IMG/VR virus record: IMGVR_UViG_3300017963_000188
Span: 186,001 to 250,000 of that record
Reading direction: 5' to 3' (one strand)
Length of the DNA: 64,000 nucleotides
In this document: in pieces, positions 74-23,039 of the stretch
Layout of the letters: every line of letters starts with the position of its first letter
Numbering within the stretch: position 1 is the first letter of the stretch
The notes under the pieces: model-generated
Seen by the model: the letters and a program-made list of their open reading frames with translations, nothing else
Told to the model about the DNA's origin: nothing
Database searches by the model: none
Position numbers and translations under genes: made by a program

Positions 74-676
74 TTAATTGGCCTCTGCCGACATGAGGAC
101 ATATCCCTTATTATGATTCCATTGAGGTAATATGACCTCTTTCAAAATGTTAAAATTTTTACTTATCTCATCGAATATATAGAAGTAAGGATCTTTATGG
201 CTTGGTTTTTTCTTGAGCAAATTGAGATTCTTAAAAAATCTATGACGAACTAATCCTTGAGAGAGCCCTAATTGCTCAGCAACCCATGATTGACATGTTG
301 TTTGGTACATACCCACCAATATGTCTACATCTAAGTCACTCATAATCTTACTTAGATCTTGTTGCATTTGTTTTTCTGATATAGCTGGGAGGGAAAGGAG
401 GAATTGAATTCTCTTGACAGCTTTCTTCAATCGATAACTAACTGCTGCCTGGGTACACCCAAAGATTTCAGCAATGTCTGATTGCTTTTTATTCACGTCA
501 AAATATAGAAAAACAAAATCAGCCTCTAGATCAGGCAATTTATCCATCAGAGGTTTCACAGTATCCATAGATAAATTATGAAAAAAAGATGCAGTCCTGG
601 TCTGTAATGCATCCTCAGTAGAAAAGCGGCTTTCTATTTCCGCTGGATCTAAAGATATTACCTGTGAAGATCTCAT
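74..676 (-). CDS. Double helix-turn-helix (sigma70 region-4-like) transcription regulator, paralogue 1
   Basis: Two HTH motifs: KKQSDIAEIFGCTQAAVSYRLKK and TCQSWVAEQLGLSQGLVRHRFFK. GGAGG SD upstream. Closely similar to 758..1513. Confidence 0.65.
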   Translation of the reverse strand: MRSSQVISLDPAEIESRFSTEDALQTRTASFFHNLSMDTVKPLMDKLPDLEADFVFLYFDVNKKQSDIAEIFGCTQAAVSYRLKKAVKRIQFLLSLPAISEKQMQQDLSKIMSDLDVDILVGMYQTTCQSWVAEQLGLSQGLVRHRFFKNLNLLKKKPSHKDPYFYIFDEISKNFNILKEVILPQWNHNKGYVLMSAEAN

Positions 677-757: not shown

Positions 758-1513
758 TCAGGAGACGTGGAAACTTGAGAAAGACATATAGAATAATATA
801 GATATTGATCGAAGTTTCATCATGAGAGATACTGAATCATGCTCTTCTACCGACAAAATACTGACCGGCAAGCCAACATAACTAGCATCGTTCCCATCCT
901 CCAATATCACCATCTGGTCTTCCACCTCCTTGATATTAAATATTTTACCAGAAGGTACGTTTACCAGCAAGTGGTTCTTACGAGTCCATTGAGGTAGGGA
1001 AACTTCTTTCAATATATTGAAGTTTTTACTTAGAGAATTGAAGATGTAAAGATATGGGTCCCTCAGATTCTTTTCAGTATCCAAGGTACGAAGACCTTTA
1101 AAGAACCTATGCCGTACCAAACCTTGGGATATATATAGACTATCAGCTACAGAGGTCTGGCATGTGGTTTGGTAAAGCCGTACAAATATCTCTACATCCA
1201 AAGGGTCCAAAACAGAAGCTAGGACCTCTCTCATTTGTGGCTCTGGTACATCAGGTATACTCAAAAGAAACTCAATACGTTTCAAAGACTTTTTGATGCG
1301 GTAACTAATCGCTGCTTGAGTACATCCAAATATATGTGCTATGTCTTTTTGTTTTTTGTTTTTAACGAAGTACAAATAAAGAATATCAGCTTCAAAATCT
1401 GGTAATCTAGTAAGACATTTATTTAGGAAATCATCTGACAATTTATCACAATCCAAATTCAATTGGCTTATTATTATGTTCTGTAGATCTGATTCATCTA
1501 TCATCACATTCAC
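758..1513 (-). CDS. Double helix-turn-helix (sigma70 region-4-like) transcription regulator, paralogue 2
   Basis: KKQKDIAHIFGCTQAAISYRIKK and TCQTSVADSLYISQGLVRHRFFK. Tandem duplicate of 74..676 with a C-terminal extension. Confidence 0.65.
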   Translation of the reverse strand: MNVMIDESDLQNIIISQLNLDCDKLSDDFLNKCLTRLPDFEADILYLYFVKNKKQKDIAHIFGCTQAAISYRIKKSLKRIEFLLSIPDVPEPQMREVLASVLDPLDVEIFVRLYQTTCQTSVADSLYISQGLVRHRFFKGLRTLDTEKNLRDPYLYIFNSLSKNFNILKEVSLPQWTRKNHLLVNVPSGKIFNIKEVEDQMVILEDGNDASYVGLPVSILSVEEHDSVSLMMKLRSISILFYMSFSSFHVS

Positions 1514-2010
1514 CTTTTTGATAAATTAAAGGTCGGGATGTCAATCAGTATCTTCAGAGACTTCAATTCAATTAACACTGAAGCTATAGATTTATCTATG
1601 TCAATAATAGTCCCAGGAAGGTCTTTATACAAACCACTTCGTATTGTCACCCTATCCTTTTTCTTGAAATTTGAAGTTAAAACAGACCTAAATTGTGTCT
1701 TCAGATCCTTCACGTAAGAGTCGTCCACTGGAGACACTCTTCTTTGGGTATTACCCTTTATCTGCTGGTCTTCAGTCAGCAACCGCTTGATGTACTTTGT
1801 GCCTTCTAATTGAAACAACTTATGAGGTGGGGTGTTGCTAATATCTATAAATATGTAGCCCTTAACTAATGATAAGTCTAGACCTTTTTCATTTTTTAGA
1901 AATGGAATGAAGATATCTACTTCACCAAGGGAAGATTGGATTTCTTTTTTCAGGCGGTCTGTATCCTCCTTTTCACCCCAACTTGTTAATTCAAATACAG
2001 CCCATGCCAT
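1510..2010 (-). CDS. nusG: NusG/RfaH-family transcription elongation or antitermination factor
   Basis: NGN-like N-terminus (MAWAVF...IFIP...KGYIFID) and KOW motif (FKKKDRVTIRSGLYKDLPGTIIDID). Start moved to ATG 2010, just after the dnaX stop. Confidence 0.8.
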   Translation of the reverse strand: MAWAVFELTSWGEKEDTDRLKKEIQSSLGEVDIFIPFLKNEKGLDLSLVKGYIFIDISNTPPHKLFQLEGTKYIKRLLTEDQQIKGNTQRRVSPVDDSYVKDLKTQFRSVLTSNFKKKDRVTIRSGLYKDLPGTIIDIDKSIASVLIELKSLKILIDIPTFNLSKR

Positions 2011-2014
2011 GTTT

Positions 2015-3328
2015 TTATCTTCCCCATGTACTAGCAAATCTCTTCTTGAAGGCTGAAGCACTCATATTTACGGCTGTAGTGCTAACTTCAATCTTCTTTG
2101 GAGTGTTCTTACGTGTCGGTTTATAACCATCGTTTCGTTTTTCAGGATTTATCCCAGCATGATCCACAGGGGTAAGATATTCAGGGTCATTATCCCCCAC
2201 GTCTTTTGGTAGAGGTTTGGATTTGGCTGTTGATGTAGCTTTAGAGGCTGGACGTATGTCAGTAGACATACTCTGAGCTTCTGTAGTGTAACCACGATGT
2301 AGCTTCTCTATAGTCAACAGAACCTCACATATTAACATGGAACGATCTAGAAACCTTAAAGATCTATTAAATGAAACCATGAATCTCTGAACCAATTCTA
2401 TATCAAACTGTCCCAAGATTGCAACTCCTTGGTTTAGATCAAAATAGTTGGGTACGATCAATCTTTGATGGAGATATTGTAGATGAACAAGATTCTCAAG
2501 GATGTTAGAGTATATGTCTTGAGGAGATAATTTGAACAACATCTCCTGGATCAAGGTGAGTGTTTTAGCCTTATCATCAGACAGTATAGATTCAATGAGA
2601 CCCAATATCTCAGTGGACCACCCAATACCTAGATAGTCCTTTACGTTCTGAGTCGAAATACCACCTATCTTACTCACTTGCTCCAAAGAACTGATAGCGT
2701 CCCTAACATGACCTTTACTATGGCTCACAATCCATTCTAAGGCTTCATGCTCGTACTCAAATTCTTCCTGCTTACAAATCAACTCCAATCGATCCGTAAT
2801 GACCTGTGAAGGTATCCTCTCTAACTGTAACAGCTCACATCTGGACCTTATAGCAGGACGCATTTTTCTGAGTTCTGTAGTACAGAAGATACCAATTAGT
2901 TTCCTATCCTCAAGAGGCTTTAGTAGAACATCTTGACTATCTTTACTCATACGGTGAGATTCATCAAACAGAATGATTTTCTTCCCACCAAAAAGATTGT
3001 AGGATAGATTATCGACCGTAGCACGAACCCAATCAATGGTACCATGACCAGCAGCATCTCTTTCTTCGAAATTGAGGTGGTCTTCATTCATGAAGTTTTT
3101 ACATGAATCACAGGTATTGCAAGGTTCATTTCCCTGACGGTTCTGACAAAGCATAGCTCTAGCAAAGATTCGAGCTAATGTTGTCTTACCACTCCCATGT
3201 GGTCCAGAAAAGACATATGATGTTTCCTGGTCTGTACCACCTTCCAACCTGGACTGTAGCACATTACGGATCTTTTCCTGGCCCAGCACATCACTGAACT
3301 GCAACGGACGATATTTTAGGTCAAGCAT
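2015..3328 (-). CDS. dnaX: DNA polymerase III gamma/tau clamp-loader ATPase
   Basis: KYRP..FSDVLGQ, Walker A GPHGSGKTT, Zn cluster C..PCNTCDSC, Walker B DESHRM, SRC motif, sensor-2 GHVRDA. Confidence 0.92.
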   Translation of the reverse strand: MLDLKYRPLQFSDVLGQEKIRNVLQSRLEGGTDQETSYVFSGPHGSGKTTLARIFARAMLCQNRQGNEPCNTCDSCKNFMNEDHLNFEERDAAGHGTIDWVRATVDNLSYNLFGGKKIILFDESHRMSKDSQDVLLKPLEDRKLIGIFCTTELRKMRPAIRSRCELLQLERIPSQVITDRLELICKQEEFEYEHEALEWIVSHSKGHVRDAISSLEQVSKIGGISTQNVKDYLGIGWSTEILGLIESILSDDKAKTLTLIQEMLFKLSPQDIYSNILENLVHLQYLHQRLIVPNYFDLNQGVAILGQFDIELVQRFMVSFNRSLRFLDRSMLICEVLLTIEKLHRGYTTEAQSMSTDIRPASKATSTAKSKPLPKDVGDNDPEYLTPVDHAGINPEKRNDGYKPTRKNTPKKIEVSTTAVNMSASAFKKRFASTWGR

Positions 3329-20813: not shown

Positions 20814-21410
20814 TTAAATTATTTCTAAACGCTCAGCTAAATTCTTTGTCTTTGGAGCAAAATAGTTGAAGAATCGTTTCTTTTCGGCAGGATTCCTCAA
20901 GACATAGGAAGGATGATACATAATGAAGACATGAAATCTCCCAGCTCTATAAATTTTGCCAGCTATATGTGTAATTTTTTGTTTCTCTTTAAATTGCATC
21001 AAAGTCTGGACTACATCTGATCCCATAAGGATCAGAATCTTTGCCTTGTCAAAAAATTCCAGTTCTTTTCGGAGATGTACTTTACAGGACTCAATCTCTG
21101 TCTGAGTAGGAGGTCGATTTCCAGGAGTGAAACATTTTACCATATTCACTATCCCAACTTGGTTTCTTTTGTAACCAACCTTCCCCATCCACTCATTCAG
21201 AAGCTGCCCAGAACGTCCCACAAAGGGCCTGGTGAAACGATCTTCATCGTTACCAGGGTTACGACCCACAAAAATGATTTTGGCATCCTGAGGGCCTTCT
21301 CCTCGAACAGGACTAACCACGTCTTGATAAAGTGGACAGAGCTGACAAGAAGCTATCTCTGTGGCAATAGAACTATCTTGGATCAGAGGTGTGTCCATGC
21401 ACACTCCCAT
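20814..21410 (-). CDS. Uracil-DNA glycosylase, family 4-like (Fe-S)
   Basis: CQLCPL, GEGP, VGRNPG..ED...PFVGRSG, NMVKC..P.NRPP, YHPSYVLR. Confidence 0.88.
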   Translation of the reverse strand: MGVCMDTPLIQDSSIATEIASCQLCPLYQDVVSPVRGEGPQDAKIIFVGRNPGNDEDRFTRPFVGRSGQLLNEWMGKVGYKRNQVGIVNMVKCFTPGNRPPTQTEIESCKVHLRKELEFFDKAKILILMGSDVVQTLMQFKEKQKITHIAGKIYRAGRFHVFIMYHPSYVLRNPAEKKRFFNYFAPKTKNLAERLEII

Positions 21411-21655
21411 CCTTTAGGTTTCAGAGTAGCTCTCTGCACGAATCCTTTTTGACTGATTTCATTTGAAATCTTCTCAACATAGAATGGACCTTTAACTTCT
21501 GCTATTCGATGTCTAGGTGGGGAACCATCATCTGGCTGATATTGTGATTTGAAAGAAAACCCATCTTCAAAATGAATCAACCATTTGGGTCTAAGAGAAT
21601 CTGTCTTTGTTTCTACTTCTAAATTCAGGTCAGGTATCACATAAATTGTCTTCAA
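21383..21655 (-). CDS. Hypothetical protein, first clear gene of the leftward operon
   Basis: TTG start with AGGGAG SD. Overlaps the UDG start. Confidence 0.5.
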   Translation of the reverse strand: MKTIYVIPDLNLEVETKTDSLRPKWLIHFEDGFSFKSQYQPDDGSPPRHRIAEVKGPFYVEKISNEISQKGFVQRATLKPKGWECAWTHL

Positions 21656-21669
21656 GATACATCTCTCCC

Positions 21670-22190
21670 TTTAGGAACGGGAGGAATTCTTGAAGAATTT
21701 GAGAGATCTCGTTCCCCTCAACCCCTTCCTAAATGTCATGCTAGCTGAAGTTATCCAGCTAGACGAACACTCATAAGTGTTCGGGTTTCATATTGTTTTT
21801 TATACCATCGTCGTTATATATGCTCTCTTTTCTGTTCCTTCCAGTGGTGTTTTTGTTTTCAAGGCTTCTGTTGTTGTTGGCTGCCCAAATTTCTGCTCGG
21901 ATGTGCCTCTCATGAACTTATAAGAGGGAAGAGACATACTTGGCCCGACTCCAACCAGCGAAATGCTGGGGCTAGTAAGGGCTGAGAGCCCACCGGTAGG
22001 CCGGTGGCAGCAAACAGCAGGGCATCTCCCAGACCATCGGGACGTAAATCTAACCTTCCCTGGTACTAGTAGGCCAGTAGTCAGGGCATTTTTACGTTGA
22101 TGGCAGATAAACTGGAAGTTTGGACATGAAACTCTTGACTTGCTAGAAGACTGTTTACCCTCAGCGGTAAGATTCAAACGACCTTTTTTC
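21670..22190. ncRNA. Highly structured intergenic region, candidate ncRNA or cis-acting RNA/ssDNA element
   Basis: Dense inverted repeats: TTTAGGAA/TTCCTAAA, CTAGCTG/CAGCTAG, CGAACACT/AGTGTTCG, CCAGC/GCTGG, GGGCT/AGCCC, CCACCGG/CCGGTGG, CCATC..ACGTAAA/TTTACGTTGATGG. Family not recognised. Confidence 0.45.
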
Positions 22191-22228
22191 ACTTTTTGAA
22201 TCCCCTCCTAATCAAGCCAATTAAGGGC

Positions 22229-22256
22229 ATTATACGGATTCAAACTCCTTTGTCTA
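22229..22256 (-). promoter_or_regulatory. Sigma70-type promoter driving leftward transcription
   Basis: Minus strand TAGACA-N16-TATAAT, upstream of the whole replication cluster. Confidence 0.6.
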
Positions 22257-22439
22257 CAAAAAAGATCTCATACAATTCCAGTAACTTACAACACTGGGTC
22301 TCATAACTCCCTGAACATACAACTAAAAAATTTCCCGCTTCCTACCCATTTTTTTTCATTTCTTCTCCTCACCATATGTTGCCATACAGATCTTTTCGTG
22401 TACTCCCCCTTCTTCATTTATATATACTCTCTTTTCTTT

Positions 22440-22645
22440 TCCTCTTGTAGGTAGAAGTTAAGATCAGATCTATTTATATATATTATTATGGAGATCCAAA
22501 AATTGGAGGTAAGGAAAGTTACCTGTGTTGCAGGTAGGGAGATTTTGGGATCTGAAAAGTTACCATACATGTATTGTAAGTGTAGAGATGAGATCCAAAA
22601 AATTGAGACCTGGATTTGTGGGTGGGGGGATGTTGATTGATCTGT
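22440..22645. other. Candidate replication origin (AT-rich core, GATC cluster, direct repeat)
   Basis: At the coding-strand switch. AGATCAGATCTATTTATATATATTATTAT core and near-repeat GAGATCC(A5/A6)TTG at 22491 and 22590. Confidence 0.35.
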
Positions 22646-22664
22646 TTGTATTGTTAGTGTATAT

Positions 22665-23039
22665 ATGAGTGAAGAGGAGGATGATATGTCGCTTAGTGGT
22701 AATTTCCCGGAAAATGGTACCAGTGTCTCAACTGAAGAGGTGGAGATTTGGAGGGAGGATATCCCTGAAGGCAATTATTGGATTCAGGAGGGGAGGAATT
22801 ATCTGAGGACTCTGACCAAGGATGATGTTATATGGATGTTGCAGAGGATTCCAAAAGCTAGGAAAGATTATTTGGAAGCTGTGAATCCAGAAAGGGAGGA
22901 TTATGTACGTCTTGCTAATGTGCCTCTGGTCAACCACTATGATCCTGACAAAATGAATAAGGGTCTTAACAGGACTCCACAGTCTATTGAATTCCTCTGG
23001 AAGGAGTGCAAAGGTGTATGGCCCAGACACAGACATTGA
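22665..23039 (+). CDS. Hypothetical protein
   Basis: First rightward ORF. GGAGG precedes its second Met. Confidence 0.55.
   Translation: MSEEEDDMSLSGNFPENGTSVSTEEVEIWREDIPEGNYWIQEGRNYLRTLTKDDVIWMLQRIPKARKDYLEAVNPEREDYVRLANVPLVNHYDPDKMNKGLNRTPQSIEFLWKECKGVWPRHRH

What the first reader, a model, noticed from the sequence alone, without database searches (positions are those of the whole stretch)
21670..22190. About 500 nt of dense secondary structure at the head of the 21-kb replication operon
Seen: at least seven stems, some nested, for example TTTAGGAA...TTCCTAAA, CTAGCTG/CAGCTAG, CGAACACT-CATA-AGTGTTCG, CCAGC-GAAAT-GCTGG, CCACCGG-TAGG-CCGGTGG, and CCATC.ACGTAAA enclosing CCCTGG..CAGGG. The region is GC-richer than its flanks. 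Several wobble pairs read G-U on the plus strand, which favours a plus-strand fold, and a copy of the T-rich motif (TTGTTTTTTAT, 21793-21803) points into it. The leftward sigma70 transcript also crosses it. I could not match it to tRNA, tmRNA, RNase P, SRP or group I/II introns. Inference: a novel ncRNA (possibly a late antisense RNA that shuts off the early operon), an antitermination leader for the phage NusG, or an ssDNA priming signal.
Basis: partly seen in the sequence, partly recalled or inferred. Interest (0 to 1): 0.7.

Follow-up and report, generated by a model that had tools for sequence, protein, structure and literature searches.

The report
Structured, translated leader of phage replication operon
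The GC-rich, hairpin-filled stretch at the head of this huge phage's replication operon is a leftward-transcribed leader holding a conserved RNA fold inside a reading frame that stays stop-free in related phages although its peptide is not conserved, which suggests a previously undescribed regulatory leader rather than a plus-strand antisense RNA.

Summary
On its own the sequence folds only slightly better than shuffles. The favoured strand is minus, not plus. The T-rich motif is not enriched.

The region sits in a 1-kb gap between divergent operons of a 358-kb phage, at the genome's cumulative GC-skew minimum. A sigma70-like promoter (22256-22229, minus) and a Shine-Dalgarno site with a GTG start (22192) open a 130-codon frame ending at 21800.

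Five related phage lineages keep one minus-strand frame stop-free for 135-196 codons at the same place (P 0.005 to below 0.0003 each). The peptides share only 12-24% identity, have atypical codon usage and are predicted unfolded.

Inside the frame lies a roughly 240-nt RNA fold (22124-21884) found in three lineages. It has 56 pairs, 25 of them with compensatory changes, and 17 G-U pairs that exist only on the minus strand. Three sequence blocks are conserved but read in different codon phases. Rfam, tRNA and tmRNA searches found nothing.

An A-rich tail and three stable hairpins (21783-21670) follow, ending at the ribosome-binding site of the first conserved gene.

Best reading: a new cis-acting, translated, structured leader. 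Its mechanism is inferred, not shown.

The parts
22229..22256 (-). Sigma70-like promoter (TAGACA-16-TATAAT) for the leftward early/replication operon. Promoter-like sites lie at the equivalent place in relatives L006 and L008.
   Evidence: These are consensus matches only; the transcription start has not been mapped.
22190..22209 (-). Ribosome-binding site AGGAGGGG (22209-22202), a 9-nt spacer, then the GTG start codon (22192-22190) of the leader frame.
   Evidence: Read from the sequence. Relatives L006, L011 and L008 also have a Shine-Dalgarno-like site and a start codon at the head of their open frame.
21800..22192 (-). Leader frame of 130 codons. It is stop-free, while the other two minus-strand frames of the 575-nt leader carry 10 and 13 stops. 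The peptide is basic (pI 10.4), not conserved and predicted unfolded.
21884..22124 (-). Conserved RNA fold of about 240 nt. A closing stem P1 (22124-22119 with 21889-21884) encloses a long hairpin, a three-way junction and variable hairpins.
22026..22118 (-). Long hairpin P2. Fourteen of its 17 basal pairs (helices 2-4) show compensatory changes across three lineages.
   Evidence: (helices 2-4).
22046..22060 (-). Conserved block A, GGGAAGnnTAGATTT. It forms most of the 3' side of an asymmetric internal loop in P2, running into the flanking stems.
21943..22023 (-). Three-way junction P3/P3a/P3b. They keep their positions but have different sequences in L006 and L011.
   Evidence: helices 7-11.
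21973..21982 (-). Conserved block B, GCCCTTACTA, a junction strand. It is read in codon phase 0, 0 and 1 in the window, L006 and L011.
21945..21954 (-). Conserved block C, TTGGAGTCGG, a junction and P3 strand. It is read in codon phase 1, 2 and 1 in the window, L006 and L011.
21800..21883 (-). A- and C-rich, T-poor, weakly structured tail that carries the end of the leader frame. A-rich tails follow the core in L006, L008 and L011 as well.
21670..21783 (-). Cluster of three stable hairpins without U-tracts: 21783-21764, 21762-21741 and 21733-21670. They lie between the leader stop codon and the next ribosome-binding site.
   Evidence: z -3.6 minus, -2.3 plus. The equivalent segments in L006 (-2.5) and L008 (-4.0) are also structured.
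21655..21669 (-). Ribosome-binding site GGGAGAG (21669-21663) and TTG start (21655) of the first conserved gene (90 aa). The 3' arm of the last hairpin lies immediately next to this site.
   Evidence: The 90-aa product is 52% identical to the 97-aa product at the same position in L006.

Best explanation
The region is the promoter-proximal leader of the leftward early/replication operon. It is made as RNA from the minus strand by host-type RNA polymerase.

It has four parts in series:
1. A ribosome-binding site and GTG start.
2. A 130-codon frame whose peptide is unconstrained but whose openness is conserved. Embedded in it is a conserved fold of about 240 nt, made of a long hairpin with a conserved internal loop and a three-way junction with conserved junction strands.
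3. An A-rich, unstructured tail.
4. A cluster of stable hairpins that ends at the ribosome-binding site of the first conserved gene.

Inferred mechanism: the leader acts in cis. Ribosomes must read through the folded leader cistron for the 21-kb operon to be expressed. They could do this by keeping transcription coupled to translation and keeping Rho off the unstructured tail, and/or by opening the hairpins that border the next ribosome-binding site. The conserved loop and junction would be a docking site for a factor or ligand that stabilises the fold and so tunes or shuts off ribosome passage.

Shown here: the strand, the conserved fold, the conserved open frame with an unconserved peptide, and the layout. 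Inferred: translation itself, action in cis, and any role for Rho or a bound factor.
For: **Context**
- The region is a 1-kb divergent gap. To the left lie a 90-aa gene, then UDG, clamp loader, class II RNR, RecD, RecA, SbcCD-like, primase-like and sigma-like genes, all on the minus strand.

**Promoter and start**
- Promoter-like site at 22256-22229, with equivalents in relatives.
- A Shine-Dalgarno site and start codon open the frame in 4 of 5 lineages.

**Open frame**
- One minus-strand frame is stop-free for 135, 160, 149, 184 and 196 codons in the five lineages. The other two frames of the same leader stretches hold 10-29 stops each.
- Dinucleotide-shuffle P values are 0.005, 0.0007, 0.0013, below 0.0003 and below 0.0003.

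**Peptide not constrained**
- Identity among lineages is 12-24%.
- Differences by codon position are 21/18/25 of 46 codons, against 119/79/169 of 284 for the clamp loader.
- The codon-usage score is -0.055, against 0.166 +/- 0.083 for real genes, and GC at codon position 2 is 0.55.
- ESM gives pLDDT 0.23 and AlphaFold2 gives 38.

**Nucleotide-level constraint**
- Blocks of 10-15 nt are identical between lineages whose neighbouring proteins are 48-58% identical. These blocks are read in different codon phases.

**Conserved fold**
- RNAalifold on the window plus L006 predicts 86 pairs, 23 with changes on both sides.
- Column-shuffle z is -7.1 on minus and -3.6 on plus.
- With L011 added: 56 pairs, 98.7% of cells paired, 25 pairs with compensatory changes, 0 of 500 shuffles as high, and only 2-3 such pairs in slid controls.

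**No end of transcript**
- No intrinsic terminator lies on the minus strand between the fold and the next gene.

**Structured spacer in relatives**
- The spacer between the two cistrons is structured in three lineages.
Against: - There are no expression data. No RNA run was listed, so the transcript, its ends and its translation are inferred.
- Only three independent sequences carry the recognisable fold. L011 was fitted to the model and matched weakly (13.4 bits, E about 0.005). An R-scape type test is not possible.
- L008 and L015 keep the open frame and the position but have no recognisable homologue of the fold. L015 shows no excess folding.
- Single-sequence stability of the core is modest: z -2.2, -0.5 and -1.7.
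- A ribosome that follows the polymerase closely would tend to prevent the fold from forming, so the two constraints need a timing argument.
- The tail is clearly C-rich and G-poor only in L006, so a Rho loading site is not a uniform feature.
Confidence: 0.5

Rival explanations
1. It is simply a fast-evolving early gene for a small, basic, disordered protein, for example a functional analogue of lambda N or an anti-host protein. On this view the mRNA structure is secondary, serving stability or translation rate.
For: - The frame is open in all five lineages and has a ribosome-binding site, a start codon and a promoter.
- All five products are basic (pI 9.3-10.7) and rich in Ser, Thr, Gly and Pro.
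- It is the first cistron after an early promoter, as N and cro are in lambda (my own knowledge of lambda).
- BLASTP between the window and L006 products gives 38% identity over 47 residues, E 4e-4.
Against: - The best-conserved nucleotides are read in different codon phases.
- Substitutions are spread almost evenly over the three codon positions.
- Codon usage and GC at codon position 2 are atypical.
- No motif is shared by all five products.
- The other two frames would also give basic products, so basicity follows from base composition.
- No fold is predicted.
- This reading does not explain 25 compensated pairs.
Confidence: 0.2
2. The element belongs to the replication origin. The promoter-driven structured transcript, or the displaced minus-strand DNA, would activate or prime replication, as with ColE1 RNA II, the T4 and T7 origin transcripts, or plasmid single-strand initiation signals.
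For: - The global minimum of cumulative GC skew for the 358-kb genome falls in kb 208, which is this gap. The first peak of the curve lies near kb 41, about half a genome away.
- Relatives L008 and L009 carry a 21-bp x 7.6 iteron-like array and an 8-bp x 6.9 array in the same gap.
- The element heads the replication genes.
- The fold is strand-specific, which also fits single-stranded DNA.
Against: - GC skew also follows gene orientation, which switches here, so the origin is not proven.
- No DnaA-box cluster is present, and the window has no tandem array.
- A maintained, ribosome-accessible frame is not expected for a primer or R-loop RNA, because translation opposes R-loops.
- The iterons in relatives lie upstream of the promoter, not in the element.
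Confidence: 0.12
3. It is a free-standing non-coding RNA, processed out of the leader and acting in trans on the host or phage. On this view the open frame is a by-product of needing ribosomes or avoiding polarity.
For: - It has a closed architecture with a P1 stem, conserved loop and junction nucleotides, and a GC-rich island in an AT-richer genome.
- The phage already carries a large RNA set of 49 tRNAs and a tmRNA.
- The hairpin cluster downstream could be a processing site.
Against: - There is no terminator and no defined 3' end.
- It is a single copy.
- It always lies in the same cis position ahead of the same operon.
- No target or partner is evident.
- The open frame remains unexplained.
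Confidence: 0.1
4. It is a plus-strand (antisense, possibly late) RNA that pairs with and silences the early leader.
For: - Most stems are strand-symmetric.
- The plus strand also beats alignment shuffles (z -3.6).
- A hairpin followed by T-rich sequence scores as a plus-strand terminator-like site at 21764-21783.
Against: - The plus-strand single-sequence fold gives z -0.45.
- Seventeen G-U cells of the consensus become A-C on the plus strand.
- No plus-strand promoter-like site precedes the element.
- The T-rich motif is not enriched.
- The terminator-like hairpin lies upstream, not downstream, of the GC-rich core on the plus strand.
Confidence: 0.04
5. There is no function. The stems are chance products of a GC-rich patch, and the open frame is a gene-caller artefact.
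For: - Local z-scores of the core are weak.
- There is no database match.
Against: - Compensatory changes are present.
- Sequence blocks are conserved.
- The open frame is significant in five lineages.
- Position and layout are conserved.
Confidence: 0.04

Closest known systems
Translated leader cistrons that gate an operon through Rho-dependent attenuation (E. coli tnaC-tnaA, Salmonella mgtA/mgtCBR and corA leaders)
   Same: A short cistron with its own ribosome-binding site lies between the promoter and the first real gene. An unstructured tract follows, and alternative RNA structures are present. What matters is ribosome occupancy, not the peptide's function (my own knowledge; reviews found: PMC12360218, PMC5314796).
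   Different: - Known leader cistrons have about 10-30 codons; this one has 130-196.
- Known leaders do not enclose a 240-nt conserved multi-helix fold.
- The C-rich, G-poor tract is clear only in L006.
- Dependence on Rho is untested.
Lambda immediate-early region (divergent pL/pR; N and cro as first genes; nut sites; Rho-dependent tL1/tR1 ahead of the replication genes) and HK022 put RNA
   Same: - Divergent host-type early promoters.
- A small, basic, poorly conserved first cistron.
- RNA hairpins between that cistron and a long operon containing replication genes.
- put RNAs are cis-acting structured RNAs just downstream of early promoters that modify the polymerase (my own knowledge).
   Different: - No arginine-rich motif or other conserved peptide motif.
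- No boxA/boxB pattern was identified.
- put RNA is a pair of stem-loops of about 70 nt and is not translated.
- No Rfam match of any kind.
ColE1 RNA II and phage origin transcripts (T4 oriF/oriG, T7 primary origin)
   Same: A promoter-driven, specifically folded transcript a few hundred nucleotides long lies at or beside the probable origin (GC-skew minimum).
   Different: - Those RNAs are not translated.
- No RNase H or R-loop feature can be tested here.
- The iteron-like arrays of relatives lie outside the element.
Large structured bacterial and phage RNAs of unknown function (GOLLD, ROOL, OLE, raiA)
   Same: It is a multi-helix, GC-rich RNA island in a phage genome that also holds many tRNAs, and it was detected by comparative analysis.
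   Different: - No match to their Rfam models even at E up to 10.
- It is smaller.
- It is embedded in an open frame and fixed at the head of one operon rather than near the tRNA arrays.

Membership tests
Any Rfam 15 family (riboswitches, ribozymes, RNase P, SRP, 6S, group I/II introns, GOLLD/ROOL/OLE and others) | Match to the family covariance model at its gathering score | tested here: not met
   There were 0 matches in the whole window at gathering score. At E up to 10 on 21400-22700, the only hit was a chance match to a human lncRNA model (15 bits against a cut-off of 50).
tRNA / tmRNA | Cloverleaf, or tRNA-like domain plus tag frame, detected by ARAGORN | tested here: not met
   ARAGORN found 0 genes in the window. 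The genome's 49 tRNAs and its tmRNA lie elsewhere, at 92-149 kb and 327 kb.
Ordinary protein-coding gene | Open frame with ribosome-binding site and start codon, kept in relatives | tested here: met
   The frame is stop-free for 135-196 codons in five lineages, P 0.005 to below 0.0003. A Shine-Dalgarno site and start codon are present in 4 of 5.
Ordinary protein-coding gene | Amino-acid sequence under purifying selection (conserved residues, excess of third-position changes) | tested here: not met
   Identity is 12-24%. Changes by codon position are 21/18/25 of 46 codons, against 119/79/169 of 284 in the clamp loader. Conserved nucleotide blocks are read in different phases.
Ordinary protein-coding gene | Codon usage and positional GC like the genome's genes; a predicted fold | tested here: not met
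   The score is -0.055 per codon against 0.166 +/- 0.083. GC at codon positions 1, 2 and 3 is 0.46, 0.55 and 0.42, against about 0.5, 0.34 and 0.35. ESM pLDDT is 0.23 and AlphaFold2 pLDDT is 38. There is no Pfam hit.
Conserved structured RNA (generic criteria) | Base pairs kept through compensatory changes, beyond controls | tested here: met
   25 of 56 pairs have changes on both sides and 98.7% of cells are paired. 0 of 500 shuffles reach this, and slid controls give 2-3. Alifold z is -7.1. Caveat: only three sequences, one of them fitted to the model.
Conserved structured RNA (generic criteria) | Thermodynamic stability above dinucleotide shuffles in each member | tested here: inconclusive
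   Core z is -2.2 (window), -0.5 (L006) and -1.7 (L011). The whole 545 nt gives -2.5 on minus.
Rho-dependent leader attenuator with leader cistron | Leader cistron followed by an unstructured C-rich, G-poor loading tract before the first gene | tested here: inconclusive
   The leader cistron is present. The tail is A-rich and T-poor in all lineages, but clearly C-rich and G-poor only in L006.
Rho-dependent leader attenuator with leader cistron | Termination that depends on Rho and on translation of the leader | not testable with these tools
   This needs reporter assays with stop-codon mutants and Rho inhibition. No RNA data were listed.
Lambda N / nut antitermination | Arginine-rich RNA-binding motif in the first early protein, and a boxA plus boxB hairpin in the leader | tested here: not met
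   No motif is shared among the five products. Hairpins exist, but no boxA/boxB pattern was recognised. This was judged by eye only, without a formal model.
Origin primer RNA (ColE1 RNA II type) | Transcript that runs into the origin and is not translated | tested here: inconclusive
   The locus is the GC-skew minimum, but the transcript carries a maintained frame with a ribosome-binding site. The initiation site is unknown.

The most novel reading that the evidence does not exclude
This is a new class of phage riboregulator. A conserved, ligand- or factor-binding RNA fold is deliberately placed inside a long 'peptide-irrelevant' leader cistron, so that ribosome transit through the fold is the switch that licenses or shuts off a 21-kb replication operon next to the origin. 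On this reading, selection acts on keeping the frame open and on the RNA structure, not on the protein.
Probability: 0.25. Interest if true: 0.8.

Novelty: new variant of a known kind. Interest (0 to 1): 0.6.

Why it matters
If this reading is right, the locus shows two constraints superimposed on one stretch of sequence: a conserved RNA fold, and a frame kept stop-free while its peptide drifts and even changes phase. Gene callers label such a stretch 'hypothetical protein', and RNA-motif pipelines usually skip it because it is 'coding'.

It would give a concrete and testable control point for the early replication operon of an uncultured clade of huge, tRNA-rich phages, lying next to their probable origin.

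It also suggests a general search criterion for hidden regulatory leaders in phage metagenomes: an open frame that is kept, an unconserved peptide, and covarying stems.

Tried and rejected
**Database matches**
- Rfam at gathering score and at E up to 10, and ARAGORN: nothing.
- blastn against 50,697 phage records: no match.

**Searches for more homologues**
- Window UDG and 90-aa proteins in IMG/VR: only identical copies of this phage, L002-L005, which are uninformative.
- Exact two-block and three-block RNA patterns in IMG/VR: this phage only.
- The same three-block pattern in GTDB genomes: two hits, in Dokdonia and a MAG. The covariance model gave no significant match at either pattern site, so I treat them as chance.
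- Protein-alignment scans of JGI metagenomes and IMG/VR: no new lineage.
- Word-based protein searches with the 90-aa, 124-aa and clamp-loader proteins: only one new contig, L023, which stops 110 nt short of the element.
- The exhaustive HMMER search with the 124-aa neighbour is what supplied the relatives used.

**Extending the fold to more lineages**
- Covariance model R1 did not find the fold in L008, L009 or L015, even with filters off.
- A sequence-only MAFFT alignment of three lineages misaligned L011 and gave only z -2.9.

**Side leads that did not hold up**
- A candidate shared hairpin motif (loop AGGCTTAGTAT) proved to be a ribosome-binding-site-plus-start cassette repeated in L008 and at 15.3 kb of the genome. 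It is not a genome-wide signal.
- DnaA boxes are not enriched and are absent from the gap. The window gap has no tandem repeats.
- The T-rich motif is not enriched.
- The 26-nt direct repeat (21814-21839 and 22418-22443) has only these two copies in the genome and no assigned role.

**Other**
- RNA sequencing runs: none was listed.
Full report
**1. Where the finding sits**

The window is bases 186001-250000 of a 358-kb virus record with 40.6% GC. The finding lies in a gap of about 1 kb, 21656-22664, between two divergent gene blocks.

To the left, every gene is on the minus strand:
- a 90-aa gene (21655-21383)
- a family-4 uracil-DNA glycosylase
- two clamp-loader subunits
- a class II ribonucleotide reductase
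- a RecD-like helicase
- RecA, an SbcCD-like pair and a Cas4-like nuclease
- a primase-like protein, another clamp-loader ATPase and a protein with a weak KOW hit
- two proteins with sigma-70 region 4

To the right, genes run on the plus strand from 22665.

**2. Checking the observation**

The patch 21880-22100 is GC-rich: 0.54 in 200-nt windows and up to 0.60 in 100-nt windows, against flanks of 0.34-0.40. It is the 14th richest distinct 200-nt window of the genome, and several of the richer ones are tRNA clusters.

The folding energy of the single sequence is less impressive.

| Stretch | z, plus strand | z, minus strand |
|---|---|---|
| Whole 545 nt (21656-22200) | -0.45 | -2.50 |
| 120-nt windows over 21680-21839 (three hairpins) | -2.2 to -2.8 | -3.1 to -3.9 |
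| 120-nt windows over the GC-rich core | +1.7 to -1.6 | +0.7 to -1.8 |
| GC-rich core as a 251-nt block | -2.1 | -2.2 |

The T-rich motif is not enriched: 7 matches against 3.3 +/- 1.8 expected. A sigma70-like site (TAGACA-16-TATAAT) lies on the minus strand at 22256-22229.

It is 130 codons long and is preceded by AGGAGGGG nine bases upstream.

**3. Known families**

- Rfam 15 gives nothing at gathering scores over the whole window. At E up to 10 it gives only a chance hit.
- ARAGORN finds no tRNA or tmRNA in the window.
- The phage collection has no similar DNA.
- The 130-aa product has no Pfam family.

**4. Relatives**

Identical copies of this phage (L002-L005) carry no information. An exhaustive HMMER search with the rightward 124-aa neighbour found eight clusters at 39-58% identity. 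Their contigs (L006/L007, L008/L009/L010, L011-L013, L015) keep the same layout: clamp loader, a gene of about 90 aa, a minus-strand frame of 147-179 codons, a gap, then the divergent 116-aa gene. A GC-rich island sits at the same relative place in each.

**5. The open frame is kept but the protein is not**

In each of five lineages, one minus-strand frame is free of stops while the other two frames of the same leader stretches hold 10-29 stops each.

| Lineage | Longest stop-free run (codons) | P from dinucleotide shuffles |
|---|---|---|
| Window | 135 | 0.005 |
| L006 | 160 | 0.0007 |
| L008 | 149 | 0.0013 |
| L011 | 184 | below 0.0003 |
| L015 | 196 | below 0.0003 |

(P values.) Four of the five lineages have a Shine-Dalgarno site and start codon at the head of the frame. 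Promoter-like sites lie just upstream in the window, L006 and L008.

Several results show that the products are not under normal protein-level selection:
- They share only 12-24% identity. The best pair gives 38% over 47 residues. The neighbouring proteins, by contrast, are 48-58% identical.
- Where the window and L006 share a frame, differences fall almost evenly on codon positions: 21, 18 and 25 of 46. The clamp loader gives 119, 79 and 169 of 284.
- The codon-usage score is -0.055 per codon, against 0.166 +/- 0.083 for the genome's long genes.
- GC at the second codon position is 0.55, against about 0.34.
- ESM and AlphaFold2 predict no fold, with pLDDT 0.23 and 38.
- All five products are basic, but the other two frames would be basic as well.

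**6. A conserved RNA fold lies inside the frame**

The window and L006 share three perfectly conserved blocks on the minus strand: GGGAAGnnTAGATTT, GCCCTTACTA and TTGGAGTCGG. L011 keeps AGCCCTTA and GGTTGG at the same spacing.

These blocks are read in different codon phases. Block B is in phase 0, 0 and 1, and block C in phase 1, 2 and 1, in the window, L006 and L011 respectively. The constraint is therefore on nucleotides, not on amino acids.

Between the blocks, hairpins keep their place but change sequence:
- CCACCGG/CCGGTGG in the window, CACGG/CCGGG in L006, GCGC/GCGC in L011
- CCAGC/GCTGG in the window, CCCC/GGGG in L006, CCCCC/GGGGG in L011

The statistics agree:
- RNAalifold on the sequence-only alignment of the window and L006 predicts 86 pairs, 23 with changes on both sides.
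- Against column shuffles, its energy gives z = -7.1 on the minus strand and -3.6 on the plus strand.
- A covariance model built from those two sequences finds the L011 element with filters off, weakly, at 13.4 bits.
- On the three-sequence alignment, 56 pairs in 13 helices are 98.7% paired. 25 pairs have compensatory changes. 0 of 500 shuffles are as high, and slid controls give 2-3.
- Seventeen cells are G-U on the minus sense and would be A-C on the plus strand, which fixes the strand.

The fold spans 22124-21884. It consists of:
- a closing stem P1
- a long hairpin P2 (22118-22026) with a conserved asymmetric internal loop
- a three-way junction (22023-21943) whose junction strands are blocks B and C
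- two variable hairpins

It is a single copy in the genome.

Caveats: only three independent sequences carry it, L011 was aligned by the model, and L008 and L015 have no recognisable homologue. L008's leader frame is nonetheless very strongly structured (z -8.0), while L015's is not.

**7. Downstream of the fold**

The last 80 nt or so of the frame are A- and C-rich, T-poor and weakly structured. A-rich tails also follow in L006, L008 and L011.

Three stable hairpins without U-tracts come next, at 21783-21670. The last one touches the GGGAGAG ribosome-binding site of the 90-aa gene. This spacer folds better than shuffles in all three lineages tested:
- Window: z -3.6 on minus, -2.3 on plus
- L006: -2.5 and -1.8
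- L008: -4.0 and -3.8

No intrinsic terminator lies on the minus strand, so the transcript should run on into the operon.

**8. The origin**

The cumulative GC skew of the whole genome reaches its global minimum in kb 208, which is exactly this gap. The first peak of the curve lies near kb 41, roughly half a genome away. L008 and L009 carry an iteron-like 21-bp x 7.6 array in the same gap, upstream of their leader promoter. The window has no tandem array and no DnaA boxes there. Skew also follows gene orientation, so the origin is probable but not shown.

**9. Interpretation**

Four things are shown: the strand, a conserved fold, a conserved open frame with an unconstrained peptide, and a fixed position between an early promoter and the replication operon.

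The reading that accounts for all four is a cis-acting, translated, structured leader. What is selected is that ribosomes can read through, together with the shape of the RNA. The most likely consequence is control of downstream expression, either by transcription-translation coupling and Rho polarity or by opening the hairpins at the next ribosome-binding site. The conserved loop and junction would be a binding site that modulates this. These mechanistic steps are inferred.

Rival readings:
- A fast-evolving basic protein gene explains the frame but not the phase-independent conservation or the covariation.
- An origin RNA or single-stranded DNA signal explains the position and strand specificity but not the frame.
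- A processed trans-acting RNA is possible but has no defined end.
- The plus-strand antisense RNA is disfavoured.
- Chance is excluded by the comparative data.

**10. Comparison and novelty**

Functionally the nearest systems are leader-cistron attenuators (tnaC, mgtA/mgtCBR) and the lambda/HK022 early leaders. This element differs in having a leader frame of 130-196 codons with a 240-nt conserved fold inside it, and it matches no curated RNA family. I rate it a new variant of a known kind. Interest is moderately high, limited by the small number of homologues and the complete lack of expression data.

Noticed in passing
window 22200-22700 (genome kb 208); L009:4421-4637: The global cumulative GC-skew minimum of the 358-kb genome falls in this divergent gap, which makes it the probable replication origin. 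Relatives L008 and L009 carry a 21-bp x 7.6 tandem array (99% matches) and an 8-bp x 6.9 array in the same gap. The window itself has no tandem array there.
   Followed up: partly
window 21814-21839 and 22418-22443 (+): A 26-nt direct repeat (92% identical, 604 nt apart) brackets the leader and its promoter. These are its only two copies in the genome. On the minus strand, each copy ends in a ribosome-binding-site-like AAGAGAG a few bases before an ATG. No role has been assigned.
   Followed up: partly
genome 15280-15390 (outside the window); L008:4215, 4182 and 3671 (-); L011:3489 (-): A cassette GGAGGCTTAGTAT(C/T)CATGAC, which reads as a ribosome-binding site, spacer and start codon, recurs in several lineages. 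Its flanking bases covary as a small hairpin. In L008, two tandem copies lie inside the leader frame and one lies in the spacer.
   Followed up: partly
genome 92-149 kb and 327 kb (outside the window): ARAGORN finds 49 tRNA genes covering all 20 amino acids, plus a tmRNA with tag ANDNALPMAA, mostly on one strand in a 57-kb tract.
   Followed up: no
window 74-676, 758-1513, 1510-2061 (-): The far end of the leftward block encodes two proteins with sigma-70 region 4 and a 183-aa protein with a sub-threshold KOW hit (E 0.0014).
   Followed up: partly
window 22488-22680 (+): The leader of the rightward operon has two pairs of direct repeats: an 18-nt pair at 22491 and 22590, and a 23-nt pair at 22570 and 22647. 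It also folds better than shuffles (z about -2 to -2.5).
   Followed up: no
L008:1-1423 and L009:1-1365: In these relatives the class II ribonucleotide reductase is 1583 aa long and carries intein, LAGLIDADG and HNH hits. The window's copy is 903 aa and has none of them.
   Followed up: no
window 21383-21655 (-): The word-based search returned only the 90-aa first gene itself, which made it look like an orphan. It is in fact 52% identical to the 97-aa product at the same position in L006, so it is conserved within this phage clade.
   Followed up: yes
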